Assembly: GCA_002269645.1 (NCBI GenBank)
Contig: NIVC01000307.1
Coordinates: forward strand, 124,001 to 188,000
Direction: 5' to 3'
DNA length: 64,000 nucleotides
Origin: Macrostomum lignano
Lineage: Eukaryota
This document shows, piece by piece, positions 14,397-63,663 of this stretch. Below the pieces are notes generated by a model that ran no database searches, had not been told where the DNA came from, and saw only the letters and a program-made list of their open reading frames with translations. A program made the position numbers and the translations under genes. Position 1 is the first letter of the stretch; the number at the start of each line of letters is the position of its first letter.

Positions 14397-14408
14397 ACTC
14401 TGGTCACC

Positions 14409-14771
14409 ATGAGAGCAGCAGCTGGTCCCATTGTCCTGCTCGTTCTCCTGTCGGCCATCTGTTATCAAGCCGTGAACGCTCGGCCTTTCAAGTCGCCATC
14501 GAACCGACACATTTTCGAGACCGACGACCAAGCAGAGCTCGTTCAGCTGATGCGTCGACTGCTCATCGAGGAGAAGATGCTCCAGCGTGAGCAGCAGCAG
14601 CAGAGGCAGTTCGAGGAGCACTTCGATCCATCTAAAAATCGTCCCTGGAACGCCGCCGAGAATCCAGCTGGTTTTCCAATGGCACCAACACCGCCAGGTC
14701 CGATTGTGGAGCGTCGCTTCAAGCCGAGCGTCACCCCGTGTCTGAGTAAGTTCTGCACCTGGTCAACTTAA
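14409..14771 (+). CDS. Secreted prepropeptide copy 3 (120 aa); predicted mature peptide FKPSVTPCLSKFCTWST
   Basis: Nearly identical to copy 1 over the first two-thirds and diverged in the last third. Confidence 0.85.
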   Translation: MRAAAGPIVLLVLLSAICYQAVNARPFKSPSNRHIFETDDQAELVQLMRRLLIEEKMLQREQQQQRQFEEHFDPSKNRPWNAAENPAGFPMAPTPPGPIVERRFKPSVTPCLSKFCTWST

Positions 14772-26900: not shown

Positions 26901-27609
26901 AGTAAAGCTGGCCTGCGTTACGGGCGCTGGCCAGCGTGAAAGAGATGAACTTGTGATCGGAGAGGGACGCCTCAGGAAGCACCCGCCATTCCCTAGTGCT
27001 CAGGAAGAGCCTGGGCGTGGCGAGGGTGGCATCCAGCACCTCCGATCGGCGTCCGTTATTGAAGGTAGGGGTACTACCCGAGTTACAGAACTCAAGGGTT
27101 GTAGTAGCAATATAAGCCAGGAAGTCTTCACCTCTCTGGTTTATATCAGAACTGCCCCAGTGGGTGTGGTGGGCATTGATGTCACCTGCCACGAGCAGCT
27201 CATAGTTTCTGGTGGAGCAGAGCTCGACCAGTGTGACAAGCTCTACTGGGATCATCTCGCCGTCGCCCGGTAGGTAAACCGAGGCGATGAGGGTAGTCCT
27301 CCCAGGGAGTATGTCTTCAGACTGGATGACACAGATGTCCCTGGTGGACAGGTCTGATCTGAGCCATGCGTTAATAGAACTGGACACCATGATGCAGGAT
27401 CTTGGTGCCAGGTTTCCCTCCCGGGTACCAGCGGTTAAACACTGGTAGCCGGTGGGGACATGTTGGGGGCTGCCCCTAAGCGTCCAAGGTTCCTGGATAA
27501 GGATAATCCCTGGCACGTATTGGTCAGTGTGCTTCAAGAGGTTGACTGAAGCAGCAATGCTGTGCTGCAGGTTGACCTGCAAGCAGTGGATGCCCTGGGA
27601 GACAGTCAT
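23907..27609 (-). CDS. LINE ORF2 polyprotein, split into three frames by two apparent 1-nt deletions (~26360 and ~25481)
   Basis: APE (QVNLQH, IQEP, GDINAH, SDH), RT (KSPGPDG, QHAFR, FLDIVGAFD, GSPQG, GYADD), RNase H (FTDGS, SDSQAAL, WIPGHAGFKGNELAD) and CPFC..H..C. Confidence 0.9.
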
Positions 27610-27611
27610 GT

Positions 27612-44220: not shown

Positions 44221-44991
44221 ATGTCCACAACGATGCTCCAAAGCAATTCAGTGTTCCTGCTTTTCCTGTTGCTGCTATTTTCAACGCCTCAGCAGACAGT
44301 TGCCAGCGAGCCAGATGAAGAGACTCCGCCTCTGGCTGCCGAACCGTACCAGCAGTCCCTATTAGTGGGTAGCAACACCACAGTTAGCTGTCATCTGTCA
44401 CCGGAACTGGCCACTAATTACTCCGTTGCTGAGCTGGCCTGGTACTTTCCCAATGGCAGCCAGATTGATAATTGGGCCTGGTCCCATGCTAATATCAGTG
44501 CAGTGAATGGCACCATGTCGGCTATTCACCTGGCTGTTGAGGACTCAGGAGATTATGTCTGCTCAGTGCCTGATCGGCGGTACAACGCTAGCACTACTCT
44601 GCAGGTGTACAACATGCCGTCTTATCTGACACAGATTGCTGTAGTGTACGCCGTGGATGGTGTACTGTTGTTCATATTCCTGGCGCTGGGCTTGCATTCT
44701 CTGCTGCTGTCACGGCGTACCAGCATCAGCACTGCACCGGATGCTTCTGCTGGCAAGTTCTCTGCAGCAGCTGGCAGGCAACAGCAGCCCCACCAGCAGA
44801 TTCGGCACAGTCGCCAGCCAAGTCGGGCAGTCTCTGAGAGCGCCGGAGCTTCAACCGGCGCCGCCGCCACCGCCGGAGCAGCAGCCGACGATGTCGATGA
44901 CAATGAGGAAGCTTTATCGACATCTCTAAGCGGCCTGAAGTCGCATCGGCACCACAGCACCCTGCCGAAACCGTCAGCGGCGGATGACTGA
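44221..44991 (+). CDS. Single-Ig type I membrane glycoprotein paralog B (256 aa from the first ATG; the ATG at 44233 is also possible)
   Basis: Signal peptide; Ig motifs VSC, AWYFPNG, DSGDYVC; six N-x-S/T sequons; TM IAVVYAVDGVLLFIFLALGLHSLLL; low-complexity cytoplasmic tail. Intronless. Confidence 0.85.
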   Translation: MSTTMLQSNSVFLLFLLLLFSTPQQTVASEPDEETPPLAAEPYQQSLLVGSNTTVSCHLSPELATNYSVAELAWYFPNGSQIDNWAWSHANISAVNGTMSAIHLAVEDSGDYVCSVPDRRYNASTTLQVYNMPSYLTQIAVVYAVDGVLLFIFLALGLHSLLLSRRTSISTAPDASAGKFSAAAGRQQQPHQQIRHSRQPSRAVSESAGASTGAAATAGAAADDVDDNEEALSTSLSGLKSHRHHSTLPKPSAADD

Positions 44992-45167: not shown

Positions 45168-46152
45168 CACTGGGCCAGCCTTCCAGACCCTCAGTTGCTT
45201 TGCCAGCCTCCCAGTCCCAGATCCTCAGTTGCTTTGCCAGCCTCCCAGTCCCAGATCCTCAGTTGCTGGACCAGCTTCCCAGACCCTCAGTTGCTGGGCC
45301 AGAGTCCCAGATCCTCAGTTGCTGGGCCAGCCTCCCAGATCCTCAGTTGCTTTTCCAGCTTCCCAGATCCTCAGTTGCTGGACCAGCTTCCCAGACCCTC
45401 AGTTGCTGGGCCAGAGTCCCAGATCCTCAGTTGCTGGGCCAGCCTCCCAGATCCTCAGTTGCTTTTCCAGCTTCCCAGATCCTCAGTTTCTGGACCAGCT
45501 TCCCAGATCCTCAGTTGCTGGGCCAGCCTCCCAGATCCTCAGTTGCTTTTCCAGCTTCCCAGATCCTCAGTTGCTGGACCAGCCTCCCAGATCCTCAGTT
45601 GCTTTTCCAGCTTCCCAGATCCTCAGTTGCTGGGCCAGCCTCCCAGATCCTCAGTTGCTTTTCCAGCTTCCCAGATCCTCAGTTGCTGGACCAGCCTCCC
45701 AGATCCTCAGTTGCTTTTCCAGCTTCCCAGATCCTCAGTTGCTGGACCAGCCTCCCAGATCCTCAGTTTCTGGGCCAGCCTCCCAGATCCTCAGTTTCTG
45801 GGCCAGCCTCCCAGATCCTCAGTTTCTGGGCCAGCCTCCCAGATCCTCAGTTGCTGGGCCAGCCTCCCAGATCCTCAGTTTCTGGGCCAGCCTCCCAGAT
45901 CCTCAGTTGCTATGCCAGCCTCCCAGATCCTCAGTTGCTATGCCAGCCTCCCAGATCCTCAGTTGCTATGCCAGCCTCCCAGATCCTCAGTTGCTGGGCC
46001 AGCCTCCCAGATCCTCAGTTTCTGGGCCAGCCTCCCAGATCCTCAGTTGCTATGCCAGCCTCCCAGATCCTCAGTTGCTATGCCAGCCTCCCAGATCCTC
46101 AGTTGCTATGCCAGCCTCCCAGATCCTCAGTTGCTATGCCAGCCTCCCAGAT
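45168..46152 (+). repeat. 28-bp minisatellite (ccagcctcccagatcctcagttgctggg)
   Basis: About 34 copies with variant 3' ends (ggg, gga, ttt, atg). Confidence 0.96.
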
Positions 46153-46605
46153 CCTCAGTTGCTATGCCAGCCAAACTTTCGTTGTCGTTGAATTTTTAAT
46201 TGTGCATGCTGATTTTATAGTTAGGTCACATCAATTGCCTATTTTTAGCTTGTAATTTGTTTCTTATGGCCGCTTGTTCAAAACTCAATTCAAATATTTA
46301 TAGTTACTTTTTTACCCTGATCAGTCAATTTAATTTTTCAATAGTCAGTGTATGCTACTTTCAGTGGTGAAAGTGAAGGAAATAAATAAAAAGTGAAAAA
46401 ATGTTTAAAAGAATATTTTTCAATTTAAACTGCAATATATTGATTGATGGTCAATAAAAAATTCATTCATGATTTGCTTATGTATTACTTTATTGTAACG
46501 TCTTTGTGGGTGCGGGATGTTAATTGCTTTGGTACTTTAAATTTAAAAAATGTCTCGTAATGTCGTCATTGCGCGCTTTTGAAGCTTTTGAATCGCTCTT
46601 TACCC

Positions 46606-47003: not shown

Positions 47004-50000
47004 TCAGTTGTCCAGTAACAGTTCGAAGCTGACGTCTGTGTCAGCAATTGCGTAGAGCAGTTCCACGGGTAATCCAGATTCAAGAGTCAATCTCAGAGCG
47101 ATGGTGCTGTTTGCTGACAATTTTATACGCTCAGAGTGAATCGGCAGAGTAACTTTGCTGCCTGGGTGAAGTTTATCGAACACTCTTTTCTCAATTCTGC
47201 TTCTATTGAGCCTCAAGTCCAGGGTGACTTGCTGACCTGTGTTGGCGCTTTCCAATGACACCTGTATAGTTCGTGGGGTGGCAATTAATGAGTTTAAATG
47301 AGGGTCGGAGGGTTACCATTCAAAAACTTCCTATCGTAATTTGCATGATTTTCGAGTGTAGACTAAGAATTAAGAATTCTACTTTGGTTGTCCATGGAGT
47401 CGTATATACAACAAGCGCTAGAACTTCTTTGTCGAAGCCCCTCTCATTTCTCGTACTCCCTTCGTTAAAGTCGTACTGCAGAGCTCAAAATGAGTAAGTA
47501 TGTGTCTCGAAGGGAGTAAATACAAGAAATGAGTTGTTTGTTAGCAATCCTGGCGCGCTATACTACTTACATGGAATAATTGGTCAGTTTATCACTGGTG
47601 AGTTGATAGACATCTTTCATTGATTGAGTCTAGTCTTGGCGGGTTTTCATCGGTAAATCAGTATTTTGTTTCTTTCTGCTTTCGGGTGTAATTGTTTTGC
47701 AGTGAGCACAGGTACTCGAATAACACAGGGTGTGTCACTTGCGATTTAAGTTGGAAGAAAGTTGAGCGTCTACTCTTTTTTCAGTAGTTAGTCTGCGCAG
47801 TGTCACTTAAATCTAAAATGGCAGTTAAAATTTATTTTCCTTCCTCGGGGTTTGCGGCCTCAGGGAGCATATGGGGTTAAAGATGGACCAACAAGAATTG
47901 AACTCGATGTACACAAGTGAACGTACGACAGACAGAACTCAGCCTAGGGGGGAGCAGGCCCAATCTACATGTAGCTCAACCAATAAGAGAGCAGTAAGGA
48001 GAGAGGGACAAAGTCAGACCGGACGAAACCCAGCATAGGGGGCAGGCCCAATCTAGCTCAGCCAATGAGAGAGTAGTAAGGAGAGAGAGCTAGGGTCAAA
48101 GTCAGACCAGACGAAACCCAGCCTAGGGGGCAGGCCCAATCTAGCTCAGCCAATGAGAGAGCAGTAAAGAGAGAGAGAGGGTCCAAAGTCAGACCGGACG
48201 AAACCCAGCCTAGGGGGCAGGCCCAATCTAGCTCAACCAATGAGAGAGCAGTAAGGAGAGTCGTCACAGTCAGACACAAGCGGGCAAGAGGAAAGCCAAA
48301 CTATTTATCGGCCTGGCTGGGGGCTGGGGGCACCACCCCTTTTCTCTCTTGCTCGCTATGCAGACGCAATGGTTTAGGCCGTTATCAAGTTTTCATGAAA
48401 TTTTCTACCTCAAATTTCTTATTGTTTTTTTGAAGCTTCAAAAACGTAAAATGTAAATTATTTTATTTCGCTTGCAGAAAGACAGAAATGCAACTTTAGC
48501 TACTAAAAAAGAGTTGATGAACGCATCTTTGCGAGTGACATCTGTAGCTAGCAGTGGCCTAATACAGGTTCTGTTTATTCTATAACGAATTTTCATTCAA
48601 AGGTTTATATTTATATTTGTTGGTTGTCATTTTTGGTTGTCATTTGGTTGTAATAATATGCTTGGAACATACTTAGGGGTACAGCGTCTCACCTGGGCAT
48701 TGATTTTGACTCTTCCTGGGCGTTTAAAAACAAACTCATTGCCGATTGTCTGCACTTGCTCGCATTGATGGTTTACTTTGCAAGTGAATGGTCCCAGGTT
48801 CTGTGCATCTGAAAGTACAATAACAGTTTGGTCTTGTTGATTGGTATGCTGAAACTCAAAACGGGGTCCAGAGTGAGGGTTGTAGCCTAGTAGTTAGAGC
48901 AAGACTTAAGACTCACTCGGAACAATTTTTCCCAATTGAGCAAGTTAAGCAAAAGACACTTCACTCTGCATTGCTTCAGTTCACCCAGCTGTAAAATGGG
49001 TGCCAGCATTAGCTGAGGTAATTGAGGGTGTGTGGCGACCCCCCAGTCCTTGGACTGAACAGCCGTACGCAGCCTTCAGATGCGCCGCGCAATAACTGCG
49101 GCTGAGCTGTCGGTTGCGCATCTACCCATTGGGGCAGGTGTAATAAAAATACTAAGGGTAATGCACTTTCGGTCGCTCTACGTTGTTCAAAAGTCCGCTA
49201 TAATTTATGTATTACTGCTAGAGAAAAATCGTTAAAAATCCCATGACTTTTCCACCAGCACATACCAAATACGAGCGTATGAAAATGGAGGATGTCGAAA
49301 AATCACATTTTTAAGCAAGTAAAATAAAGTACAAACTTTCAAAGCTAAAATAGTATTTATAACTACACTGTTTGAAAAATAACAAAAAACCCAAAATCTC
49401 TTTTTAAAAAACTGACTCAAGAAACGCTAAAAACCTTTGTTATATCACTTATATGCAAGCGATTAATTTATTGATATTTGTTATTTTTAATCATTTTCAA
49501 AGTGCGATTTTTTCGTTTCACGGGGATTTTTTTGGACTTTTCAGGAACGAAGATTAGTTATGGATAGTTAGAGTAGACCTTTGAGAAAAAGGGCGAAAAG
49601 GAGACAAAAAACCTATGCTACCAAGCTTGAGCCATACTCACAGAAACCATTACTCACGGCCATTGGCGCCCGGCAGTATAAAAGTTGGTCTTTTGCCATG
49701 CCTGCAGTTGGTTTCTTTATTGTCCGAGCAAACGACAATTCGTTTAGGATCAAGGACCATCGAGAAGTAGATTGTTGGCCGCTGAAATGCGCATTATACA
49801 CGCTTTTCTATTGTTATTGTTACTTAAAGTAGTTAAAAAGTATAACGAGTCTTACAGTTGTGCTACGAGTAGAGGAAATCTTCGATCCAGTCGCAGCTGT
49901 GGTGATGGCTGCTGCTGCTGGACTTCTTCGGCTCACGGCGCTGACAAAGTTTGGCGCAGGTGTTGTAGAAATCTTGTCGTCAGTTTCTTGACAGAGCTTG

Positions 50001-50272
50001 TAGAGGATGGCAGCTAAAAGCGCAATCCCAAGCAGTGCGCAAATCATATAGAAGATACTTTTACAGTTGCATTGTTGGCTTGTTGCCAGTTTAATGTTCT
50101 CTTGCTGCTCCTGATTCCGAGGCTTCCCGTTTAATGGAGCTTGTTCGCTTGGGTCTTCCTCAGTCTTCTCTGGAGTTTTAGGGACTGTTGAAAGCTCCTG
50201 CTGATTTGGCGAATCGTCTTCTACAGAGGACCTTTGGGATGAAATAGGATTAGACATTCCGCTAGTTGTCAT
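47004..50272 (-). CDS. Type II membrane protein with a divergent TNF/C1q-like C-terminal domain (TNF-like gene 2, ~304 aa)
   Basis: Exons 50272-49856, 49781-49658, 48808-48693 and 47261-47004 with canonical GT..AG and phases 0,1,0. TM IFYMICALLGIALLAAILY. Shares FSMVLD..IVVC, LGP..C and G..KINAQ|VSL with TNF-like gene 1. Start codon uncertain. Confidence 0.75.
47935..48260 (+). repeat. ~80-90-bp tandem repeat, ~4 copies, in intron 3 of TNF-like gene 2
   Basis: Recurrent gtcagaccggacgaaacccagcctagggggcaggcccaatctagctcagccaatgagaga. Confidence 0.85.
48876..49150 (+). mobile_element. Probable tRNA-derived SINE
   Basis: Head gggttgtagcctagtagttagagc resembles a tRNA A-box region. Central cttcagttcacccagctgtaaaatgggtgcc resembles conserved central domains of metazoan SINE superfamilies. 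A-rich end. No clear B-box or TSD. Confidence 0.45.
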
Positions 50273-50872
50273 GCAACTGCTCAAGTAAGACTCGTTTCTT
50301 AGTTTACTTTTTAAAAAACTATAGCTGCTCTTTAAGCGTTTGCGTTGGTTCCATATTATAGTCTGCTTTTCTGTGCTTTTAACTTTTATTTCAACTGCTT
50401 TAGTGGCATGCTCAACGCCCACTCATTTTCTTACCTTCTCGCCTCAACCCCAACCCTCTATCCAGCGGAAAGTACGCACCTTTAACCTGTGCTTATTATT
50501 TAGAACCTTGTTCCCTGCGCACACAGCCAAAGTTCCCCTTTTCTATCAAATTTCGCTGATTGGACAGTGTTACGAGAATTTCATTAGCTTTGTCTGCGAC
50601 TTGCCAGATTGTAGCGAGTGCATTGACATGAGCTCAGTCATATGCCGGTATACAGAGAGAGCTGATCGCCTGTGGTTTTACTCTTTTAATGCATTCTGTA
50701 ATGCTGTAATTTCAATGAAAACTGTAGCGCCATAACTGACAACACATACTGACATGGTGCCAATGTCGGAGCTAAGATGGCACCATTTAGTTGCGACTCT
50801 CAATGGCGCCGGAACTGACGCTTCATGCTGCGCCAAAATTGACAGTTCCTCTAGCAGCGTTAAAATTTTTAC

Positions 50873-51715
50873 ACTCCCGTACAGTAGCGCTGAAACTGAC
50901 ACTCCAATGACGCAAAATTCACACTCCCAGTGGCGCCAAAACTGACACTCCAATGACGCAAAATTCACACTCCCAGTGGCGCCAAAACTGACACTCCAAT
51001 GACGCAAAATTCACACTTCCAGTGGCGCCAAAACTGACACTCCAATGACGCAAAATTCACACTCCCAGTGGCGCCAAAACTGACACTCCAATGACGCAAA
51101 ATTCACACTCCCAGTGGCGCCAAAACTGACACTCCAATGACGCAAAATTCACACTCCCAGTGGCGCCAAAACTGACACTCCAATGACGCAAAATTCACAC
51201 TCCCAGTGGCGCCAAAACTGACACTCCAATGACGCAAAATTCACACTCCCAGTGGCGCCAAAACTGACACTCCAATGACGCAAAATTCACACTCCCAGTG
51301 GCTCCAAAACTGACACTCCAATGACGCAAAATTCACACTCCCAGTGGCGCCAAAACTGACACTCTAATGACGCAAAATTCACACTCCCAGTGGCGCCAAA
51401 ACTGACACTCCCATATACAGTGGTCCTAAAACTGACACTCCCATATACAGTGGCGCCAAAACTGACACTTCCATATACAGTGGCGCCAAAACTGACACTT
51501 CCATATACAGTGGCGCCAAAACTGACACTTCCATATACAGTGGCGCCAAAACTGACACTTCCATATACAGTGGCGCCAAAACTGACACTTCCATATACAG
51601 TGGCGCCAAAACTGACACTACAGTGGCGCCAAAACTGACACTTCCATATACAGTGGCGCCAAAACTGACACTGCTATATGCAGTGGCGCCAAAACTGACA
51701 CTGCTATATACAGTG
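50873..51715 (+). repeat. Compound array: 46-bp unit (~50873-51385) grading into a 30-bp unit (~51386-51715), both built on cagtggcgccaaaactgacac
   Basis: Direct reading. Confidence 0.95.
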
Positions 51716-51904
51716 GGATTAAAATTGGCACTTATCAGCAAAGCTTTTGTCTCGAAATGATTTTGGCAACACTAAATTGGCCAAAACTTTGTACGTCTGT
51801 TATAGCTACTTAAAGTAGTCTGCAGTATGACTGCTTAGTAGGATAATTCGAGTAAATCTTTGTTGGAAACTTTAACTTTAGTGTTACAAGACTTTAAAGC
51901 TACA

Positions 51905-52590
51905 GATTTTAGCGCCCCAACTAAGATTTTAGCGCCACAAGCAAGATTTTAGCGTCACAAGCAAGATTTTAGCGCCACAAGCAAGATTTTAGCGCTACAA
52001 GCAAGATTTTAGCGCAAAAAGCAAGATTTTAGCGCCACAGACATTATTTTAGCGCCACAATCAAGATTTTAGCGCCGCAACTGAGATTTTAGCGCCACAA
52101 TCAAGATTTTAGCGCCACTAGCAAGACTTAGCGCCACAAGCCAGATTCTAGCGCCACAACTAAGATTTTAGCGCTACAAGCAAGATTTTAGCGCAAAAAG
52201 CAAGATTTTAGCGCCACAGACATTATTTTAGCGCCACAATCAAGATTTTAGCGCCGCAACTGAGATTTTAGCGCCACAATCAAGATTTTAGCGCCACTAG
52301 CAAGACTTAGCGCCACAAGCCAGATTCTAGCGCCACAACTAAGATTTTAGCGCCGCAACCAAGATTTTAGCGCCGCAGACATTATTTTAGCGCCACAATC
52401 AATATTTTAGCGCCGCAACTGAGATTTTAGCGCCACAGACAAGATTTCAGCGCCACAATCAAGATTTGAGCGCCACAATCAAGATTTTAGCGCCAGTAGC
52501 AAGACTTAGCGCCACAAGCCAGATTTTAGCGCCACAAACAAGATTTTAGCGCCACAAATAAGATTTTAGCGCCACAAGCAAGATTTTTAC
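51905..52590 (+). repeat. 20-bp minisatellite (gattttagcgccacaagcaa)
   Basis: About 34 copies with higher-order structure. Confidence 0.95.
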
Positions 52591-53989
52591 CCTCAAAACT
52601 GAAATTTTTATAAAAATCAGCTAAGCTCAGACAGGACATTTTTTGAGTTGTTTCTATAGCTGCAATCTCACTGTCACATGTAAAAATTCTACTTCTTTGA
52701 CTTCAAGCTTTTCGAATTGCCCACTCAAAATACATGTACGTGTAACTCACTCTGTACAGTGCTGCGCACACTGCACTGAGCTTGAGATTAAATTTCTAAG
52801 TTGACCTCTATAAGCATGAGTCAGTGTTTATTCATAAGAAACTCTGTCTAAATAGTTTGTTTAGACAAATAAAAGGGAAGTTCTACTTTTCTGCCTATAT
52901 TTATTCTGTGCTCAAGACTCGGCCAGACACTTCTGAATACTTCATTGTTCCACTCAAGCCTGCTGTATTAAAATGGTCTTGATTATTGTCTGTTTTTCTC
53001 TTCTGTCTGAGTTAGATAATTGGTTCATTTAAAAAAATAACACTAGCGTTTATCTCCTCTCTCCTAATACTAAAACCGACGCGATGTTTGCCTGTCTGTC
53101 TGTCTGTATGTTGCAAGTGAACTCCTACAATCCTGGCAAGTCAGCGTCAAAACTTATATGGGAAAACTGCAAATTTTCCGGATCAGGCTTTAGGCCATTT
53201 TAATCTCTACTCTACATACGCTCGTAGAAAAATCACAACTGTCTGTGTTCTGTCTGTCTGTGGACAATTTTGATCGCTATGGACTCCCAAACCACTCAAC
53301 CAAATGACACCAAATTTTGCACCCACCCTAAACTCACTACGGAGAATGTCTTAGGCTACTTTTACATTTCTTAAATTTGAGTCTTCCTACCTAAAAGTGC
53401 AAAAAACTGCTCAAAATGCGCGTTTTTTTACTTAATCCTTCGTAGCGCCGCTCCACTTCTACCGATTCTCTTCAAATTTGACACAGACAATCTTCAACTA
53501 TTTTGGCACAATCGTGTACTATTTCGAGTCTCAAACTCAATTTTGAACGGCGCTGTGCACTTTTAAAGTTAGGCTGTTTTTTCAGCGAGACAGCCACCCA
53601 ACCTCCGTCCGCCTGCCTCTCTTTCCCGATCTGGGCCCAGATGTGTAAAAGGGGTTTAAAAATTGACTAACTTTCGGCTGCCATAAGTTTGCTCCACGTG
53701 AAGCGATTGACTTTGATCTTGACAAAATTCTTCATTGACTCATTCTCTATCTAAATGTAAAGTTTCAACTCTGTAACTCATTCAGAGCAGAAACTGTAAG
53801 CATGTGAAGTTTGTCTGCTTTTTCTGTTGTTTGTGCCACTCACTCACTCACTCATTCCCCCAGAGCCAGACCAAGGGTCAGGCGATAGGACTGAATGTAC
53901 ATAACAAATGTACAGTGTTTTGGAATAGCTTTCTTTATATCCTTCTTTGCACCTCCGTGGAGGCTACGTTTAGCCACAACAGTTTAGTG

Positions 53990-55626
53990 CAGTGCTGGGC
54001 GTTAACTAGTTAATTGTTTAACTAGTTAATTAACTAGTTAAATTTTTTTAAAAAATCGTTAAATTTTCGTTAAATTTTTTATGTATTAACTAGTTAACAA
54101 AAATCGTTAATTTTTTCCTGTAAGTTAAAGTTAAATGACAAAAGTTAATAATTCCGGGAAATGGAGTTCCCCGGGTTCAAAATCCGCGGGTTTCAACAGC
54201 TTGTATGCCATTAAAAAGTAAAATTAATACATACATAAAATAACTTCGCCTTTCTAAGCATTATTTAATGCGTCACAAACTATTACATGTATATATTTCA
54301 GTTACAAGTTATAATGTATAGAATATTCCGGAAGATTCTGGAATCTTCAACTATTATCTATTGATATTCTACCCAAGGACTACTAGAAGTTATCGTTGTA
54401 CATAGGGATGTCGATTCCCCAGGGAATTTTCTTATTGGGGACCTGGGGAATTTACTGTCATTCCACGGGGATCCCGGGAAAAAATAAGTAAAAAACGGCG
54501 GATAACTTAGATCTTTATAAGTCACTAAGTGGCATTTTTTAAACTTTGATTAAAGCTTTGGATGGACTACATATTCAAGGCGCAAGGGTAAAAACTTTAA
54601 GCAATGTTTGTTTAAAACTGTATTTGACAACATGGCATCACCAAATCGTGTGCACACCTTTATCAGAAAGGGTCCAGACTCCGGAGGCGGAAAATGCATG
54701 CTCAGCAGCTGCACTCGTGGGAGGATAATTAATGAATGAGACTGTTTTTGTAATCGGAATTTTAATTTCTTGCAGATACATGTAAATCACCATTTTGTCC
54801 TGTCTAATACGGAGTATTTTGTTATTGTATGACACCCCCCTATGCGTCAGTGACTGACACAGGATATGGCGCTGTGCCTGTGTCAAATCTGTCAAGCCGT
54901 CAACGTAGACCAACACAATAGTCAGTAAGGCTTCTTTTTCCTGACAGGTTTCTACGCTCGTACATTCAATTTGCTTGATTGAAAGACTCATAGTGAAAAA
55001 AAAACATTCAAACGGGTTGCTAATTTCATAAGACCGAAATTTCACAACGCCGAAAATTCTACATGCAATACAATCCTTATTGTAAAGTTTTCTACAATGT
55101 GAAATTTTGGTCTTATGAAGTTTCGGTCTTGTGAAGTATGGTGTTTCGGCGTTGTGAAATTTCAGTCTTATGAACCCCCCCCCATTCAAACGTGTGTTGT
55201 GTTTGAAATAATACATTGAAATAAGCAGTTTTGCGGTAAAAAAGCATAGACAGAGTTTCAATCAGCTTTCTGTGAATGATTTTCTTATTTAAATGGCAAA
55301 AATTTAGTTAAAAATGCTTTTTTTCTCCCCAGGGTCCCCGGTCTAATTCCCAGGGGAGTATTCCCTGACAAGCTCCCCAGGGCGCCGCGACCTGGCCACA
55401 GCCGCGCCGCGCCGACCTGAAATTTAAAAAACACGCCGAACACATGTCCAGGAAAATGTCACTTTTTCTGTTAGGGAATTATTAACTTTAACTTTTAACT
55501 TTTCAGAAGTTAAATTTTGGGCAAAAGTTAAATAATTAACTAGTTACAGTTAATTTTTTTGGAGCAATTAAATTAACTTTTTAACTTTTAACAAGTTAAA
55601 AAAATTGATTAACTTGCCCAGCACTG
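53990..55626. mobile_element. hAT-type non-autonomous element with probable nested insertions
   Basis: TIR cagtgctgggc / gcccagcactg; perfect 8-bp TSD gtttagtg; ttaac/gttaa subterminal repeats. The internal segment ~54152-54205 recurs at ~57880-57932. Confidence 0.85.
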
Positions 55627-56059
55627 GTTTAGTGAGAAATTCTAACCACTGCCCTCACCTCTGTATTGGCAAACTCTGCAGCAGTTTAACAGTGGATGGC
55701 AATTGGCAAATCAAGGCAATCTGGCATGGTTTGTGAAAGCGAAAGATTTATGAAAAGGTGATGCAATGCAATACAACCCTACTAAATTAGGCACACCATG
55801 GAAATTTTAAGTTTCTCTTAAAAGTACCTTAAATTTTAAATGTCCTCCTAAGAAATGCGTATTTCCTTGGTTGTTAGACTGATGCAGACTGCAGTGGAGC
55901 TGAAAATACACAAATTCCTTTCAGGACTGCAAATTGGCAAGAAAGATGACATGATCAAAGCATGAGAACAGAAATGAGAGTACTACTACGTCCCACAAAC
56001 TGGCTTTCCAAGCAGGAATGGGTAGATTTTTACTTCAGAAGCCGTATAAAGAATCCAGC

Positions 56060-56902
56060 TTATGTTCAGGCCAGATGAGAGTGGAAAGGAGAAGGAATAG
56101 ACTATTAGAAGAGAGGAGAGGCGAGAGGGGGATATGAGAAAACATGGAATATAAGAGGAGAGACAAGTGGTGAGGAGAGAGCAGAGAAGAAGGGAGGAAG
56201 AAGCGAGAAGAGGGGAGAAAGGAGGGAGAGGAAAGAGTAAGGTTAGAAGAGGGGAGAGATGAGACAGAGGATCGATGAGAGGAGAGTAGAGAAGAGTGAA
56301 AAGAGAGTAGAGATGAGAGAGCAGAAAGAAGATGACAGAGGGTCAAGAGGAGTGGAGAGATTAGAAAGGAGAGAGTAGAAAGGATAGAGAAGAGAGGAGA
56401 TAAGATGGGGGGAGAGGAGTGAGAAGAGAAGAGATAGTGATAAGAGAGGGGTGTAAGAAGAGGGGAGAAAGGAGAGATGAGAGAGTAAAGGGAAGAGGAG
56501 GAGAGAGGAAAGAGATGAGACAGATGAAAGGAGAGATGAGAGAGTAAAGATGAGAGATGAAAAAGGTGAGAGGAGAGTGCAGAGAGACGAGAGAAGATAA
56601 TAGAGGAGAGAGAGTATAGAAGAGGGAAGAGAAAAGAAGAGAGGAGTAAAGAAAAAAGGAGTCAGAAGAGGTGAAAGGGACGAGTACAGAGGAGATAAGT
56701 GAGAGAACGTATAAGAGAGTAAAGATGACAGATGAGAGAGCAAATGAACAGACGAGAGATGGGAGTAGAGAGAACAGAGGAAAGATAAGAGAGAAGAGAT
56801 TACAGAGACTAGAGGAGAGAGGAGAGACAGGGAGAGAGAAGAGGAAATAGGAGAATGAAGAGGGGAGAGAGTAGAGAGGAGAAAAGAGATGGGAGAGAAG
56901 AG

Positions 56903-56973
<71 letters not shown>

Positions 56974-57620
56974 GAGCAGAGAGAAACGAGAAGAGATAAG
57001 AGAGAAAAGATAAAGGAAGAGAAAGGAGAAATGAAAGAGCAGACGAGAGAGAAGAGAGGTGAGGAAAGAGACGAGAGAAAAGGGGAGAGAGGAGAGAGAA
57101 AGGAAAGAGTAGAGAGGAGAGATGAGAGAGTAGAGGAGAGAGTTAAGAGATAAGAGAAAAGAATAGAGAGGAGAAGGAAGAGACGAGAGAAGAGGGGGAG
57201 AGAGGAGAGGAGAGAGAAAACGAAAAAGTAGAGAGGAGAGAGGAGAGCAGAGAGAAACGAGAAGAGATAAGAGAGAAAAGATAAAGGAAGAGAAAGGAGA
57301 AATGAAAGAGCAGACGAGAGAGAAGAGAGGTGAGGAAAGAGACGAGAGAAAAGGGGAGAGAGGAGAGAGAAAGGAAAGAGTAGAGAGGAGAGATGAGAGA
57401 GTAGAGGAGAGAGTTAAGAGATAAGAGAAAAGAATAGAGAGGAGAAGGAAGAGACGAGAGAAGAGGGGGAGAGAGGAGTGGAGAGAGAAAAGAATAGGGA
57501 AGAGATGAAATAAGAGAGATGAAAGAGAAGAGAGATGAAGGAAAATACGAGAGAAGAGAGGAGAGAAGAGAGAGGAGAGAGGAGAGACGAGGGACGAGAG
57601 AGAAGAAAGGAAACAGAAGA
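56060..57620 (+). repeat. Purine-rich low-complexity tract with (GA)n at ~56905-56969 and an internal direct duplication of a few hundred bp
   Basis: Direct reading. Confidence 0.92.
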
Positions 57621-58368
57621 GACGATAGAAATTTTAAAGGATCCAAGGGACATAGGGAGAGTCAGGGAGAGGCCAGAGTTTGCCAACACATGTTTTAGAG
57701 TCAGACAGACATTTCCTGGCATTCTGCGGAGTACCCCAGCCAACAATATCAACGTTTGCCTCAAACCCTAATTTTACACGAATGTGCTCCATTTTATGTC
57801 TACCTCTATCCTACTAACTATTAACAAGTTTTTGTTTGTGTATGTATGGCCTTAGATTTCAGAATACATGCAAAAGTAGTTCCGGGGATTGGAATTCCCC
57901 GGGTTCAAAATCCGCGGGTTTCAACAGCTTGTGTACGAGCTATACTATATAATATAATGTCGATATATCCAGATAGACAAAGTGTAGCAGTTCGATGGCA
58001 TGTGGCGTTTCATGAAGAATGGTGACGTCCAATCTTGTACACCCTGTATGAGCGTGTGTGAGTGTGTGCCTGCATACAGACAGTATTGGCATATTGACGT
58101 TTTCTGTTTTCATATCATATCCTCTTTTACACAGGTGAATTCGAGGTCATTTCTTGCAGTTTCTGCATCAGCTAAAAACTTAATACTTATCAGTTATGTA
58201 CAAGTTTCTTTGGTTAACCTTATTCTTTATAAACATGGCAATCCTATATGAGAAAAATACATTAAATGACAAACTAAAAAACTATGATTTACATGTCCGT
58301 TAAAAGTTCATGTTCGAGCGACAAGCTAGCTAGGCTATCAAAAATAATTTGTACGCTTGTTAAGGATG

Positions 58369-60583
58369 TCAGTCAGACAGGCGCACCAGTCCCCAGAACG
58401 TGACTGCGCTATCTGCGTTGACAACTCTGAAGGCCTCAGGTGAGTGCACGGCCACTCGATCGCCTACTTTGAATCGTCTTTGACTATTGATGACGCAGTA
58501 TGAGCCGTTGGACATCGAGTTCGCCTGATGACACTGGGCCGAAGTGTGCTTGCCGTTCACCTGCAGCGACACGGCAACTGGGCTGGACTCGGAATCTCGA
58601 AAGCTGACCTGGTTTGGGGATAAATCATTTGCCAAGTTCAACGTTCAACATTAACGTTCCACTGACTGGAATGCTCTTGACTGGGATTCTCCTGACTGGA
58701 ATTCCCCGGAGTGGGATTCCCCCGACTGAGATTCCCCTGCCTGGGATTTCCCTGACTGGGGTTCCTCTGGGGTCAGGATTCCACTGACTGAGAAATCGAT
58801 AACTCACTTACCTGGGCATAAATCAGATAAACACCTCCCATATTTAATCCGACGCTGCCCGAATTTCCGGTCAAGTTGAAACCTCCGGCATTGTCATGGC
58901 AACGGCAGCCGACTGTGCGCGATGAGTCCGACTGGCACTCGTCTCGGCAGACTACGGGTCCGAGGCATCCGTCTGTTTGGCGTTTAATGATGTCGTGTTT
59001 TATGGTGAGTCCCCCTAAGAAAGTCCCCCCCCTAAAACACCACCCCCTAAACACCACCCTAAAGCAACCCCTCTAAGACAGCCTCCTAGAATAGCCCCCC
59101 CTTTACAGCACCCCCCTTAAACACAGTCCCACTAAAACAGCCGCCCTTTAAAACAGCCCCCTTAAAACATCCCCTTAAAACAGCCCCATTAAAACAGCCC
59201 CCTTTAAAACAGCCCCATTAAAACACCCCCTTAAAACAGCCCCATTAAAACAGCCCCCCTTTAAAACAGCCCCATTAAAACAGCCCCATTAAAACAGCCC
59301 CATTAAAACAGCCCCATTAAAACAGCCCCCCATTAAAACAGCCCCATTAAAACAGCCCCATTAAAACAGCCCCATTAAAACAGCCCCATTAAAACAGCCC
59401 CCATTAAAACAGCCCCATTAAAACAGCACCCCATTAAAACAGCCCCATTAAAACAGCCCCATTAAAACAGCCCTATTAAAACAGCCCCATTAAAACAGCC
59501 CCATTAAAACAGCCCCATTAAAACAGCCCCCCATTAAAACAGCCCCATTAAAACAGCACCCCATTAAAACAGCCCCATTAAAACAGCCCCATTAAAACAG
59601 CCCTATTAAAACAGCCCCATTAAAACAGCCCCATTAAAACAGCCCCATTAAAACAGCCCCCCATTAAAACAGCCCCATTAAAACAGCCCCATTAAAACAG
59701 CCCCCCATTAAAAAAGCCCCATTAAAACAGCCCCCCTTTAAAACAGCCCCATTAAAACAGCCCCCCATTAAAACAGCCCCATTAAAACAGCCCCATTAAA
59801 ACAGCCCCATTAAAACAGCCCCCCATTAAAACAGCCCCATTAAAACAGCCCCCCATTAAAACAGCCCCATTAAAACAGCCCCCCATTAAAACAGCCCCAT
59901 TAAAACAGCCCCATTAAAACAGCCCCATTAAAACAGCCCCCCTTTAAAACAGCCCCATTAAAACAGCCCCCCTTTAAAACAGCCCCATTAAAATAGCCCC
60001 ATTAAAACAGCCCCATTAAAACAGCCCCATTAAAACAGCCCCATTAAAACAGCCCCCTTAAAACAGCCCCCCTTTACAGCACCCCCCTTAAACACAGTCC
60101 CACAGCCCGCTTAAAACAGCCCCTCTAAGACAGCCACCATATCCACACCAGACAAAAGTGGGGCAGCCAGTCCCATCCCCTCACCAATAGTGTAATACTC
60201 AGTGTCCGATCTCATGCACGGCAAGTCGGTATACTTCACACGAAGTCCCGAACGCGCACAAGTCTTCAATTTTTGCTTATCCAAAACAAAGTGCATGCTG
60301 ACCTATCGAAAGTATGATGGTTTAGAATGAATTGTTTTCACTGTGATGAAAATTTTCACTTATAGAAATCTGATTTATTACCCAGGTAAGTGACAGATCT
60401 TACCGGTTCGTCTGGTGATCTACCGAAAATCGGATTGTTAATGTAAACGGACACCGAGTAGGAGGCCACTGCGGTTGAGCAAATGAAAGCAACGCATGCC
60501 AGAACAAGTGCCGGCTGCCAGCAAGCAAAATTTGCTTCAATATTCACCAGTTTATCAGCAGTTTCTTTGCTGTTATTCGGCAT
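58369..60583 (-). CDS. Type II membrane TNF-superfamily ligand (TNF-like gene 1, ~232 aa)
   Basis: Exons 60583-60404, 60302-60185, 58972-58812 and 58608-58369 with canonical GT..AG and phases 0,1,0. TM ALVLACVAFICSTAVASYSVSVYI. Splicing rebuilds the TNF hallmark GVYLIYAQ|VSF. The C-terminus has GDRVAV and TFWGLVRL. Confidence 0.88.
59030..60130 (+). repeat. 14-bp minisatellite (aaaacagccccatt) filling intron 2 of TNF-like gene 1
   Basis: Direct reading; about 70 copies. Confidence 0.97.
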
Positions 60584-61092: not shown

Positions 61093-61600
61093 AGATTCTT
61101 GTACAGGTAGCTGGAAGCTATACAGATTCTTGTACAGCTAGCTGGAAGCTATACAGATTCTTGTACAGCTAGCTGGAAGCTATACGGATTCTTGTACAGG
61201 TAGCTGGAAGCTATACAGATTCTTGTACAGCTAGCTGGAAGCTATACAGATTCTTGTACATGTAGCTGGAAGCTATACAGATTCTTGTACAGGTAGCTGG
61301 AAGCTATACAGATTCTTGTACATGTAGCTGGAAGCTATACAGATTCTTGTACATGTAGCTGGAAGCTATACAGATTCTTGTACAGGTAGCTGGAAGCTAT
61401 ACAGATTCTTGTACAGGTAGCTGGAAGCTATACAGATTCTTGTACAAGTAGCTGGAAGCTATACCGATTCTTGTACAGGTAGCTAGAAACTGTACAGATT
61501 CTTGTACAGGTAGCTGGAAGCTATACAGATTCTTGTACAGGCAGCTGGAAACTATACAGATTCTTGTACAGGCAGCTGTAAGCGATACAGATTTTTGTAC
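61093..61600 (+). repeat. 31-bp minisatellite (gattcttgtacaggtagctggaagctataca), ~16 copies
   Basis: Direct reading. Confidence 0.96.
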
Positions 61601-62118
61601 ATGGAATTTTTTAGCCATGGATTGTAGTTTTTGATAAAAATGTGGATAGATTTTACTCAGCTGTTTCTTTACTTTCTACTGCAGTCCAGCCATTTATCAA
61701 GTAGTATTTATTGAAAAATGATTAAAAAAGTTTTTTACACAGATAAAACCAAAAGTACAGCCCGCAATGCAAAATTCGCAGAGCGGAGTGAGAGAATTAC
61801 AACGCTGCCTTTGACTCGCTTTCGAGCTGCACCCAGACAGGCGGAGCGCTTATGCTAAATAGTAGACTCTCTACAAGTTCCAGTTTACTTAAAGAGTTCT
61901 TGCAATCGCTAATTGCTTAGAATTGCTGCTTTTTGTGGCGGAGTTTTTTGTCAGGTTCTGTTGGAAAATGCTGCGTCATTTTACATGCATGCATGACCTA
62001 AAGTTCTTACTGCCTATTCTACATGTACCTTCCACGAGTTGCAATTGCAAAAGTGTGTGAATACCGCCTGCTTTGGTTGTCTACTAATCTACTATTTTAC
62101 CAAACCATTGTTTAGACT

Positions 62119-63663
62119 TCTCTGTAGCTGGCGCCCCTCTGTAGTTGGCGCCCCTCTGTAGCTGGCGCCCCTCTGTAGCTGGCGCCCCTCTGTAGCTGGC
62201 GCCCCTCTGTAGCTGGCGCCCCTCTGTAGCTGGCGCCTATCTGTAGATGGCGCCCCTCTGTAGCTGGCGCCCCTCTGTAGCTGGCGCCTATCTGTAGATG
62301 GCGCCCCTCTGTAGCTGGCGCCCCTCTGTAGATGGCGCCCCCTCTGTAGCTGGCGCCCCCTCTGTAGCTGGCGCCCCTCTGTAGATGGCGCCCCCTCTGT
62401 AGCTGGCGCCCCTCTGTAGCTGGCGCCCCTCTGTAGCTGGCGCCCCCTCTGTAGCTGGCGCCTATCTGTAGATGGCGCCCCTCTGTAGCTGGCGCCCCTC
62501 TGTAGCTGGCGCCCCTCTGTAGCTGGCGCCCCTCTGTAGCTGGCGCCCCTCTGTAGCTGGCGCCCCTCTGTAGATGGCGCCCCCTCTGTAGCTGGCACCC
62601 CTCTGTAGATGGCGCCCCCTCTGTAGCTGGCGCCCCTCTGTAGATGGCGCCCCCTCTGTAGCTGGCGCCCCTCTGTAGCTGGCGCCCCCTCTGTAGCTGG
62701 CGCCCCTCTGTAGATGGCGCCCCCTCTGTAGCTGGCGCCCCTCTGTAGCTGGCGCCCCTCTGTAGCTGGCGCCCCTCTGTAGCTGGCGCCCCCTCTGTAG
62801 CTGGCGCCCCTCTGTAGCTGGCGCCCCTCTGTAGATGGCGCCCCCTCTGTAGCTGGCGCCCCTCTGTAGCTGGCGCCCCTCTGTAGATGGCGCCCCCTCT
62901 GTAGCTGGCGCCCCTCTGTAGCTGGCGCCCCTCTGTAGCTGGCGCCCCTCTGTAGCTGGCGCCCCTCTGTAGCTGGCGCCCCTCTGTAGCTGGCGCCCCT
63001 CTGTAGCTGGCGCCCCTCTGTAGATGGCGCCCCCTCTGTAGCTGGCGCCCCTCTGTAGCTGGCGCCCCTCTGTAGCTGGCGCCCCTCTGTAGCTGGCGCC
63101 CCCTCTGTAGCTGGCGCCCCTCTGTAGCTGGCGCCCCTCTGTAGATGGCGCCCCCTCTGTAGCTGGCACCCCTCTGTAGATGGCGCCCCCTCTGTAGCTG
63201 GCGCCCCCTCTGTAGCTGGCGCCCCTCTGTAGCTGGCGCCCCTCTGTAGCTGGCGCCCCTCTGTAGCTGGCGCCCCTCTGTAGCTGGCGCCCCTCTGTAG
63301 CTGGCGCCTATCTGTAGATGGCGCCCCTCTGTAGCTGGCGCCCCTCTGTAGCTGGCGCCTATCTGTAGATGGCGCCCCTCTGTAGCTGGCGCCCCTCTGT
63401 AGATGGCGCCCCCTCTGTAGCTGGCGCCCCTCTGTAGCTGGCGCCCCTCTGTAGCTGGCGCCCCTCTGTAGCTGGCGCCCCTCTGTAGCTGGCGCCCCTC
63501 TGTAGCTGGCGCCCCCTCTGTAGATGGCGCCCCCTCTGTAGCTGGCGCCCCTCTGTAGCTGGCGCCCCTCTGTAGCTGGCGCCCCTCTGTAGCTGGCGCC
63601 CCCTCTGTAGCTGGCGCCCCTCTGTAGCTGGCGCCCCTCTGTAGATGGCGCCCCCTCTGTAGT
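62119..63663 (+). repeat. 17/18-bp minisatellite (ggcgcccctctgtag(c/a)t), ~90 copies
   Basis: Direct reading. Confidence 0.97.

What the first reader, a model, noticed from the sequence alone, without database searches (positions are those of the whole stretch)
47004..60583. Two tandem TNF-superfamily-like ligand genes hidden by splicing, with identical intron phases
Seen: neither gene is evident from the ORF track, but both assemble into four exons with phases 0,1,0 at equivalent positions. The layout is TM/stalk | first strand (VSMHFVLDKQKLKTC vs TIYFSMVLDPKRIVVC) | LGPxxC...IxAQ | VSx...end. Known: TNF ligands are type II membrane proteins with a G.Y.IY.QV.F strand and a terminal T.FG motif, and gene 1 has both. 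Inference: an old, lineage-specific tandem expansion of TNF-like cytokines, a family that is sparsely characterised in spiralian invertebrates.
Basis: partly seen in the sequence, partly recalled or inferred. Interest (0 to 1): 0.72.

Follow-up and report, generated by a model that had tools for sequence, protein, structure and literature searches.

The report
Flatworm TNF gene plus divergent neighbour
This stretch of the flatworm Macrostomum lignano genome carries one already published TNF-family cytokine gene and, 8 kb downstream, a very divergent relative that databases list only as a hypothetical protein; this is a modest addition to a known gene family.

Summary
The window is Macrostomum lignano DNA. 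On the minus strand two four-exon genes assemble with canonical GT..AG introns and phases 0,1,0. Gene 1 spans 60583-58369 (232 aa) and gene 2 spans 50272-47004 (304 aa).

Gene 1 is a true TNF-superfamily ligand and is already known. It is identical to UniProt A0A1I8HE44/A0A1I8JJI7 ("TNF_2 domain-containing protein") and to three sequences in Bertevello et al. 2020. It passes Pfam TNF by a narrow margin, and its best solved relatives are Eiger, APRIL/BAFF and EDA.

Gene 2 matches transcript-derived GenBank models (BOX15_Mlig030652g1, Mlig010472g1) that are annotated "hypothetical". It has no Pfam hit, no PDB sequence hit and no relative among 1.84 billion representative proteins. It is still probably a divergent member of the Macrostomum TNF family, for these reasons:
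- A family profile built without genes 1 and 2 scores it 18 bits (E about 1e-7 for the single comparison; best of 2000 shuffles against a near-identical profile was 8.5 bits).
- It keeps the family's four N-terminal cysteines and the LGPxxC motif.
- It has type II topology and the family-wide exon layout.
- A partial AlphaFold model finds TNF/C1q folds first, though weakly.

Gene 2 has lost the strand-C tyrosines, the E-F cysteine pair, RRxxxGD and TFWG. Its function is unknown. Interest is modest.

The parts
60404..60583 (-). Gene 1 exon 1: ATG at 60583, short cytoplasmic tail, single transmembrane segment (about aa 22-48), short stalk. Donor CCG|gtaaga, phase 0.
   Evidence: Identical to the N-terminus of UniProt A0A1I8JJI7 and M_lignano_0048272.
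60185..60302 (-). Gene 1 exon 2: first strand VSMHFVLDKQKLKTC...PC...YYTI. Donor G|gtgagg, phase 1.
   Evidence: This exon fragment alone scores 17.0 bits against a family profile built without gene 1.
59027..60101 (-). A 14-bp minisatellite (about 74 copies) that fills most of gene 1's intron 2.
58812..58972 (-). Gene 1 exon 3: (D)GCLGPVVC...GGVYLIYAQ. Acceptor aaacag|AC, as used in the published and UniProt models of gene 1; an unused in-frame alternative acceptor lies at 59014. Donor CAG|gtaagt, phase 0.
   Evidence: The fragment scores 30.6 bits against the family profile.
58369..58608 (-). Gene 1 exon 4: VSFRDSE...QC...YC...RRFKVGDRVAV...TFWGLVRLSD plus the stop codon.
   Evidence: The fragment scores 66.6 bits against the family profile. 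Pfam TNF covers aa 141-229 of the protein.
50273..58368 (.). The 8.1-kb spacer between the two genes. It is mostly minisatellites (50882-51716, 51904-52587, GA-rich 56277-57622) and contains no further TNF-like ORF.
49856..50272 (-). Gene 2 exon 1: ATG at 50272, a 70-aa hydrophilic cytoplasmic tail, a transmembrane segment (about aa 72-93) and a Ser/Thr/Ala-rich stalk. Donor ACT|gtaaga, phase 0.
   Evidence: The AlphaFold transmembrane helix has pLDDT above 90.
49658..49781 (-). Gene 2 exon 2: RPTIYFSMVLDPKRIVVC...NC...PGANG. Donor C|gtgagt, phase 1.
   Evidence: Aligned to the family's first strand by HMM and by hhalign.
48693..48808 (-). Gene 2 exon 3: (H)AQNLGPFTC..HQC..GNEFVFKRPGRVKINAQ. 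Donor CAG|gtgaga, phase 0.
47004..47261 (-). Gene 2 exon 4: VSLESANTGQQVTLDLRLN...ERIKLSANSTIALRL...TDVSFELLLDN plus the stop codon. No significant sequence similarity after LRLN. In the AlphaFold model this part is all beta-strand at pLDDT 54-77.

Best explanation
The interval holds two neighbouring, same-strand genes of the Macrostomum-specific branch of the TNF ligand superfamily.

Gene 1 is a canonical type II membrane TNF ligand. It has a short cytoplasmic tail, one transmembrane helix and a C-terminal TNF homology domain. By analogy with solved relatives (Eiger, EDA, APRIL/BAFF), it is expected to trimerise into a jelly-roll bell and to engage a cysteine-rich TNF receptor. M. lignano has such a receptor with a death domain (Bertevello et al. 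2020). Gene 1 has no furin site, so it would act membrane-bound or after metalloprotease shedding.

Gene 2 is a transcribed, intact, highly divergent paralogue. It keeps the family's architecture: type II topology, a four-cysteine N-terminal module with LGPxxC, the G-x-x-x-I-x-AQVS strand C, and exon phases 0,1,0. It has replaced most core and trimer-contact residues.

Shown here: the gene models, the transcript support, gene 1's homology to TNF ligands, and gene 2's statistical similarity to the Macrostomum family.

Inferred: trimerisation, receptor binding, any signalling role, and origin of the pair by local duplication.
For: Species and models.

Gene 1:
- Pfam PF00229 scores 23.6 bits against a cutoff of 23, E 5e-5.
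- PDB sequence hits are Spodoptera Eiger 6i50 at E 1.6e-4, then APRIL/BAFF and EDA.
- It is identical to published M. lignano TNF ligands.
- The family profile without gene 2 hits APRIL/BAFF at 5.5e-24, EDA at 2.7e-8 and Eiger at 5.8e-7.

Gene 2:
- A family HMM built without genes 1 and 2 scores 16.9-18.1 bits, E(Z=1) 2e-7 to 9e-8. The best of 2000 shuffles scored 8.5 bits.
- hhalign gives probability 75%, E 2.6e-5 over 89 columns.
- In a six-frame scan of 3643 fragments, gene 2's exons 2 and 3 rank among the top background fragments. They are adjacent, in order and on the same strand.
- The family cysteines and LGPxxC are retained.
- There is a single transmembrane segment and no signal peptide.
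- In the AlphaFold model, residues 243-325 are all beta-strand at pLDDT 54-77.
- Foldseek's best matches are 4-1BBL, Cbln1/C1QL, EDA and TWEAK, with target-normalised TM-score 0.41-0.49.

Gene structure: the same 0,1,0 layout is found in another M. lignano TNF gene on contig NIVC01000083.1. Introns 1 and 3 are at the same positions in its neighbour, BOX15_Mlig012060g1.

Constraint: among four gene-2 copies, 2 of 166 ectodomain positions vary against 10 of 138 N-terminal positions, Fisher p = 0.014.

The tandem pair is preserved on a second contig.
Against: - Gene 2 has no Pfam TNF or C1q hit at E up to 10.
- It has no PDB sequence hit.
- It has no relative outside M. lignano among 1.84 billion representatives.
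- BLASTP of gene 1 against gene 2 gives E 0.088.
- Of the 13 residues invariant in the family, gene 2 keeps 6. It lacks both strand-C tyrosines, the E-F cysteine pair, RRxxxGDxV and TFWG.
- The AlphaFold model has low overall confidence (mean pLDDT 48). It was built with three TNF paralogues in a four-row alignment, which leans it towards that fold.
- No Foldseek match reaches E 1e-3, and PDE6D and CBM6 sandwiches appear among the hits.
- The two alleles of gene 2 differ by 5 nonsynonymous and 2 synonymous changes. These are too few to test, but they are compatible with relaxed constraint.
- The single-sequence AlphaFold model of gene 1 failed, with pLDDT 38.
Confidence: 0.72

Rival explanations
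1. Gene 2 is a TNF-derived duplicate that has lost ligand function. It would be a transcribed relic drifting towards pseudogene status, not a working cytokine.
For: Most family-invariant residues are lost, including trimer-core aromatics and the E-F disulfide. Exon 4 has no detectable sequence similarity to the family. The two alleles differ by 5 nonsynonymous and 2 synonymous changes. No orthologue was found elsewhere.
Against: The ORF is intact and all splice sites are canonical in every copy seen: three GenBank models, two UniProt entries and this window. The ectodomain varies less among copies than the N-terminal part does (2 of 166 against 10 of 138 positions, p = 0.014). Two N-glycosylation sequons and the four N-terminal cysteines are retained.
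Confidence: 0.15
2. Gene 2 is an unrelated type II membrane protein with some beta-sandwich ectodomain. Its resemblance to the TNF family and its position next to gene 1 would be coincidental.
For: No Pfam or PDB sequence hit. Pairwise BLASTP is not significant. The Foldseek list also contains non-TNF sandwiches.
Against: The profile score is far above 2000 shuffles and above every other fragment of 109 kb translated in six frames. The similarity falls on family-specific features: the first-strand xxVLDxxxxxxC motif, the second cysteine, LGPxxC and AQVS. The exon boundaries and phases match those of at least two other family members.
Confidence: 0.08
3. Gene 2 is a C1q-domain protein, not a TNF ligand. 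The two folds are sisters, and Cbln/C1QL structures rank high in the fold search.
For: Foldseek ranks 2-6 are Cbln1 C1q domains, with E values close to that of 4-1BBL.
Against: There is no Pfam C1q hit. There is no signal peptide and no collagen-like stalk; instead there is a type II transmembrane anchor. The significant sequence similarity is to the Macrostomum TNF family, and that family's profile hits only TNF ligands in the PDB.
Confidence: 0.03

Closest known systems
Macrostomum TNF ligand homologues of Bertevello et al. 2020 (Parasit Vectors 13:491; UniProt 'TNF_2 domain-containing protein' A0A1I8HE44 and A0A1I8JJI7)
   Same: Gene 1 is one of these sequences (100% identical). Gene 2 shares their family-specific first strand, the four-cysteine/LGPxxC module, the AQVS strand, type II topology and the exon-phase layout.
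   Different: Gene 2 is not in that set and is annotated only as hypothetical. It has lost the tyrosines of G-x-Y-x-I-Y, the QC...TC cysteine pair, RRxxxGDxV and TFWG. It is the longest branch in a neighbour-joining tree of the family.
Eiger / EDA / APRIL-BAFF group of TNF ligands (PDB 6i50, 6zt0, 1rj7/1rj8, 1xu1, 1kxg)
   Same: These are the best solved-structure relatives of gene 1 and of the family profile. The alignment covers strands C to H, including GVYLIYxQV and the C-terminal xTFxGxxxL. They are also type II membrane proteins.
   Different: The Macrostomum proteins carry an extra cysteine-rich segment (C...PC...LGPxxC...C) between the first strand and strand B'/C. There is no furin site in either stalk and no collagen repeat as in EDA. 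Identity is only about 20-30%.
Clustered vertebrate TNF genes (LTA-TNF-LTB; TNFSF12-TNFSF13), named from general knowledge
   Same: Paralogous ligand genes lie side by side. In the LTA/LTB case the neighbouring products form heterotrimers.
   Different: No heteromer evidence exists here. The vertebrate neighbours all still pass TNF domain models, whereas gene 2 does not.

Membership tests
TNF ligand superfamily (TNFSF) | Type II membrane topology: N-terminus inside the cell, a single transmembrane segment, no signal peptide. | tested here: met
   One hydrophobic segment in each protein (gene 1 about aa 22-48, gene 2 about aa 72-93) and hydrophilic N-termini. The AlphaFold helix for gene 2 has pLDDT above 90.
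TNF ligand superfamily (TNFSF) | C-terminal TNF homology domain recognised by the curated model Pfam PF00229: gene 1. | tested here: met
   23.6 bits against a cutoff of 23, E 5e-5, covering profile positions 24-126 of 127. UniProt names it a TNF_2 domain protein. PDB hits are Eiger, APRIL/BAFF and EDA.
TNF ligand superfamily (TNFSF) | C-terminal TNF homology domain recognised by the curated model Pfam PF00229: gene 2. | tested here: not met
   No TNF hit at E up to 10. One further member of the 9-sequence family alignment also fails at E up to 1.
TNF ligand superfamily (TNFSF) | Signature residues: strand C G-x-Y-x-I-Y-x-Q-V-x-F and strand H T-x-F-G. | tested here: inconclusive
   Gene 1 has both (GVYLIYAQVSF, TFWG). 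Gene 2 has GRVKINAQVSL, which keeps G, I and AQVS but has lost both tyrosines. At the strand H position it has TDVSF, where only the T is kept.
TNF ligand superfamily (TNFSF) | Ten-strand jelly-roll fold. | tested here: inconclusive
   The single-sequence model of gene 1 failed (pLDDT 38). The gene 2 model is only partial: pLDDT 54-77 over about 85 residues, with eight or nine strands. Its best Foldseek matches are TNF/C1q folds, but E is 1.4e-3 or weaker and the input alignment contained TNF paralogues.
TNF ligand superfamily (TNFSF) | Homotrimer formation and binding to a cysteine-rich-domain TNF receptor. | not testable with these tools
   No multimer prediction or binding assay was available. 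A TNFR with a death domain exists in M. lignano according to PMC7519573.
Macrostomum/rhabditophoran TNF ligand family (Bertevello et al. 2020 set) | Significant match to a profile of the family's ectodomains. | tested here: met
   Gene 1's exons score 66.6, 30.6 and 17.0 bits against a profile built without gene 1. Gene 2 scores 16.9-18.1 bits, E(Z=1) about 1e-7, with the best shuffle at 8.5 bits; hhalign gives E 2.6e-5. For gene 2 the match covers only the N-terminal 100 residues of the ectodomain. If corrected for a whole proteome it would be about E 0.01.
Macrostomum/rhabditophoran TNF ligand family (Bertevello et al. 2020 set) | N-terminal cysteine module: first-strand C, (P)C, LGPxxC and a fourth C. 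| tested here: met
   Both genes have all four. P and C of LGPxxC are invariant across the 9 aligned sequences.
Macrostomum/rhabditophoran TNF ligand family (Bertevello et al. 2020 set) | Exon layout TM/stalk | first strand | LGPxxC..strand C | rest, with intron phases 0,1,0. | tested here: met
   Genes 1 and 2. The second TNF gene on NIVC01000083.1 has the same layout. BOX15_Mlig012060g1 has introns 1 and 3 at the same places, both phase 0, but lacks intron 2.
C1q domain family | Signal peptide, usually a collagen-like stalk, and a gC1q domain (Pfam PF00386). | tested here: not met
   No C1q hit at E up to 10 for either gene. Both have a type II anchor in place of a signal peptide, and no Gly-X-Y repeats.

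The most novel reading that the evidence does not exclude
Gene 2 could be a functional 'degenerate-THD' protein. It would be a TNF-fold type II membrane protein that has given up the canonical homotrimer core. It might work as a heteromeric partner or modulator of the neighbouring canonical ligand, as LT-beta does with LT-alpha, or it might signal through a non-TNFR partner. That would be a lineage-restricted innovation in a regenerating flatworm.
Probability: 0.15. Interest if true: 0.55.

Novelty: new member of a known kind. Interest (0 to 1): 0.3.

Why it matters
TNF ligands were long thought to be absent from flatworms. They are now known only from a few free-living species, and parasitic flatworms keep the receptor but lack a ligand (PMC7519573). 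M. lignano is a transgenic regeneration model, so its TNF genes can be tested by experiment.

This analysis adds three things:
- A full, transcript-supported gene model for one published ligand.
- The observation that M. lignano TNF genes sit in neighbouring pairs at two or more loci and share a 0,1,0 exon layout.
- One extra, very divergent family member that domain models miss.

The third point suggests that published paralogue counts for this family, which rest on Pfam or BLAST, are underestimates. None of this changes the general picture of TNF evolution.

Tried and rejected
- **Handing in the spliced proteins directly.** I used the database twins P0001 and P0002 instead.
- **Single-sequence AlphaFold of gene 1's THD.** It gave an unusable model (pLDDT 38), so I ran no fold search on it.
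- **Exhaustive phmmer of gene 2** against 1.84 billion representatives. It found only gene 2 itself and a mis-modelled twin.
- **Word-indexed search with the 9-sequence family alignment.** It returned only four M. lignano/M. tuba-type proteins, and no intermediates.
- **PDB sequence search with gene 2.** Only chance-level hits.
- **Search for a third TNF-like gene in the window.** None found.
- **Expression data.** I looked for Mlig010472, Mlig009154 and Mlig012060 in the supplements of two M. lignano expression papers and in the full-text library. Nothing was found.
- **Rfam scan of the window.** No matches.
- **The alternative acceptor at 59014 for gene 1.** It is in frame and canonical, but no retrieved database or published model of gene 1 uses it, so I set it aside.
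- **dN/dS between alleles.** Too few differences to be informative: 1 in gene 1 and 7 in gene 2.
- **Neighbour-joining tree.** It cannot place gene 2 because of its long branch and low support. I make no claim about which paralogue gene 2 came from.

Full report
**What is there**

The window is eukaryotic and repeat-rich. Protein searches identify it as Macrostomum lignano, a free-living flatworm. I read the minus strand between 60800 and 46900 in three frames and checked the DNA at each boundary. This gave two four-exon coding models.

- Gene 1: exons 60583-60404, 60302-60185, 58972-58812, 58608-58369; 232 aa.
- Gene 2: exons 50272-49856, 49781-49658, 48808-48693, 47261-47004; 304 aa.

All six introns begin with GT[AG]AG and end with a pyrimidine-rich tract plus AG. 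Phases are 0,1,0 in both genes.

**Are the junctions real?**

From MHFVLDK onward, gene 1 is 100% identical to UniProt A0A1I8HE44. Over its full length, including the transmembrane exon, it matches A0A1I8JJI7 and the published model M_lignano_0048272, which come from a dataset its authors describe as manually corrected, partly with RNA-seq reads. These models use the acceptor at 58972, not the in-frame alternative at 59014.

Gene 2 is identical to GenBank BOX15_Mlig030652g1 and 98% identical to BOX15_Mlig010472g1, with the same three junctions. The GenBank annotation of this genome was made only from RNA-seq-based transcript assemblies plus TransDecoder (PMC5730564). The junctions therefore have transcript support. 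A third UniProt model, A0A1I8HD46, skips exon 3 and is a mis-prediction.

A second contig, NIVC01000840.1 (locus L001), carries the same pair in the same order and orientation with identical splice sites. Gene 1 differs there by one synonymous base. Gene 2 differs by two synonymous and five nonsynonymous bases.

**Gene 1 is a TNF ligand and is already known**

- Pfam TNF (PF00229) scores 23.6 bits against a gathering cutoff of 23.
- The best solved relatives by sequence are Spodoptera Eiger (6i50, E 1.6e-4), an APRIL/BAFF construct and EDA. The alignments run from GVYLIYAQV to the C-terminal TFWGLVRL.
- Bertevello et al. 2020 (PMC7519573) searched flatworm genomes with the same Pfam model and reported TNF ligands in M. 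lignano and three other free-living species. Three of their sequences are gene 1.
- A 2026 preprint also places the M. lignano TNFSF proteins as a clade among invertebrate Eiger homologues.

**Gene 2 by standard tests**

- It has no Pfam hit at E up to 10.
- It has no meaningful PDB sequence hit.
- BLASTP against gene 1 finds only the LGPxxC patch, at E 0.088.
- An exhaustive HMMER scan of 1.84 billion representative proteins finds only gene 2 itself.
- All database copies are called hypothetical or uncharacterised.

**Gene 2 against the family**

The published flatworm TNF set shows family-specific features that general TNF models do not encode. These are a first strand of the form xxHLVIDxxxxxxC, a second cysteine (usually PC), an invariant LGPxxC and a fourth cysteine, all upstream of strand C. 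Gene 2 has every one of them.

- A profile HMM of seven family ectodomains, built without genes 1 and 2, scores the spliced gene 2 ectodomain at 16.9 bits, E 2e-7 for that single comparison. The best of 2000 shuffles scored 8.5 bits.
- Adding an eighth member recovered from L002 raises this to 18.1 bits, E 9e-8.
- hhalign gives 75% probability and E 2.6e-5 over 89 columns.
- In a six-frame scan of the window and L001 (3643 fragments), nothing outside gene 1 exceeds 6.5 bits. Gene 2's exons 2 and 3 are individually among the top few background fragments.
- The same family profile without gene 2 hits only TNF ligands in the PDB: APRIL/BAFF 5.5e-24, EDA 2.7e-8, Eiger 5.8e-7. The link from gene 2 to TNFSF is therefore transitive.
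- The similarity stops after LRLN. Exon 4 beyond that point has no detectable sequence match.

**Gene structure as independent evidence**

On contig NIVC01000083.1 (L002), BOX15_Mlig012060g1 is the published '6798' TNF-like type. It has phase-0 introns at RRDL|KTLPLYINLA and VHST|ISF, the positions of introns 1 and 3 here, and no intron before LGP.

Its immediate neighbour on the opposite strand is a further TNF gene, with a weak Pfam TNF hit. That gene has exactly the layout TM | PCVSLSINRSAIQHC... | (E)RSLGPLVC...IHST | VTF..., with phases 0,1,0.

M. lignano TNF genes also occur as neighbouring pairs at two or more loci.

**Topology and structure**

Each protein has one strongly hydrophobic segment, no N-terminal signal peptide, N-glycosylation sequons only on the C-terminal side (apart from one at residue 3 of gene 1), and no furin-type site.

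AlphaFold2 on gene 1's THD alone failed, with pLDDT 38.

For gene 2 I used P0002 with a four-row alignment (A2). The transmembrane helix is confident. Residues 243-325 (gene 2 numbering 204-286) form eight or nine beta-strands at pLDDT 54-77, in the order expected for strands B' to H. The first 60 residues of the ectodomain are not modelled.

Foldseek against the PDB ranks 4-1BBL first (E 1.4e-3), followed by Cbln1/C1QL C1q domains, EDA and TWEAK. Target-normalised TM-scores are 0.41-0.49 over 75-90 columns. No hit reaches 1e-3, and PDE6D and CBM6 sandwiches also appear. The alignment contained TNF paralogues, so this result is supportive but partly circular.

**What gene 2 has lost, and whether it is constrained**

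Of the 13 columns invariant in the eight-member family alignment, gene 2 keeps six. Missing are:
- both tyrosines of strand C
- the two cysteines of the E-F region
- the second arginine, G, D and V of RRxxxGDxV
- the FWG of TFWG

That could mean new function or decay. Against decay, every copy seen has an intact frame and intact splice sites. Among four copies, only 2 of 166 ectodomain positions vary, against 10 of 138 in the tail and stalk (Fisher p = 0.014). The allele comparison is too small for dN/dS.

**Age and origin**

In a neighbour-joining tree, gene 1 joins the '2434'/M. tuba clade (72% bootstrap) and the L002 neighbour joins the '6798'/M. tuba clade (84%). Gene 2 is the longest branch and has no affinity to gene 1.

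The other clades already contain M. tuba counterparts. The split between genes 1 and 2 is therefore probably older than the divergence of those species, or gene 2 has evolved very fast. Local duplication is the natural reading of two such pairs, but it is an inference.

**Comparison with known systems and verdict**

Gene 1 is a known member of the TNF ligand superfamily, closest to the Eiger/EDA/APRIL-BAFF group. It carries a Macrostomum-specific cysteine-rich insert.

Gene 2 is best described as a new, highly divergent member of the Macrostomum TNF family. It meets the family-specific tests (profile, cysteine module, exon layout, topology). It fails the general Pfam test. The fold test is inconclusive, and trimerisation and receptor binding could not be tested.

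The finding is real and correctly interpreted in outline, but its main component is already published. The new element is modest.

**Other content of the window**

- Two non-LTR retrotransposons and a mariner remnant.
- Many minisatellite arrays, one of which fills gene 1's intron 2.
- No Rfam family match.

Noticed in passing
L002 (NIVC01000083.1) 10001-11554 (+) and 13416-15823 (-): This is a second pair of neighbouring TNF-family genes in M. lignano, in convergent orientation. One is BOX15_Mlig012060g1, the published '6798' type, which has no precomputed Pfam hit. The other is a paralogue that matches none of the sequences in Bertevello's Data S3, and it has the same four-exon 0,1,0 layout.
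   Followed up: partly
window 59027-60101: Intron 2 of gene 1 is almost entirely a 14-bp minisatellite (about 74 copies; 28/44-bp higher-order units). In L001 the span between the exon 2 and exon 3 matches is about 190 bp shorter. The GenBank annotation pipeline dropped transcripts that overlap repeats. That may be why no gene is called at gene 1's position on L001.
   Followed up: partly
window 17578-20640 (+) and 23907-29141 (-): Two non-LTR (LINE-type) retrotransposons. The first is a 1020-aa ORF with an AP-endonuclease and a reverse transcriptase domain. The second is GC-rich (58%) and split over several ORFs carrying endonuclease, RT and RNase H domains.
   Followed up: partly
window 15691-16599 (-): A mariner/Mos1-type transposase remnant, with an HTH_48 domain and a partial DDE domain.
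   Followed up: no
window 45170-46172, 50882-51716, 51904-52587, 56277-57622, 61093-61601, 62120-63662: Dense minisatellite arrays with units of 17-46 bp, plus a GA-rich tract with strong purine skew. They flank both genes and generate long spurious ORFs in all frames.
   Followed up: no
window 44221-44991 (+): A 256-aa ORF with sub-threshold immunoglobulin-domain matches (Ig_3, E 0.0017, 19 bits against a cutoff of 30). It may be an exon of an Ig-domain gene just downstream of gene 2.
   Followed up: no
database entries for gene 2 (P0003, P0006): UniProt A0A1I8HD46 is a mis-model that skips exon 3 and part of exon 4. GenBank copy BOX15_Mlig030652g2 reads the 5' leader in another frame, so its first ATG is lost. 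In that copy translation would have to start at the second Met (MSNPISS).
   Followed up: partly
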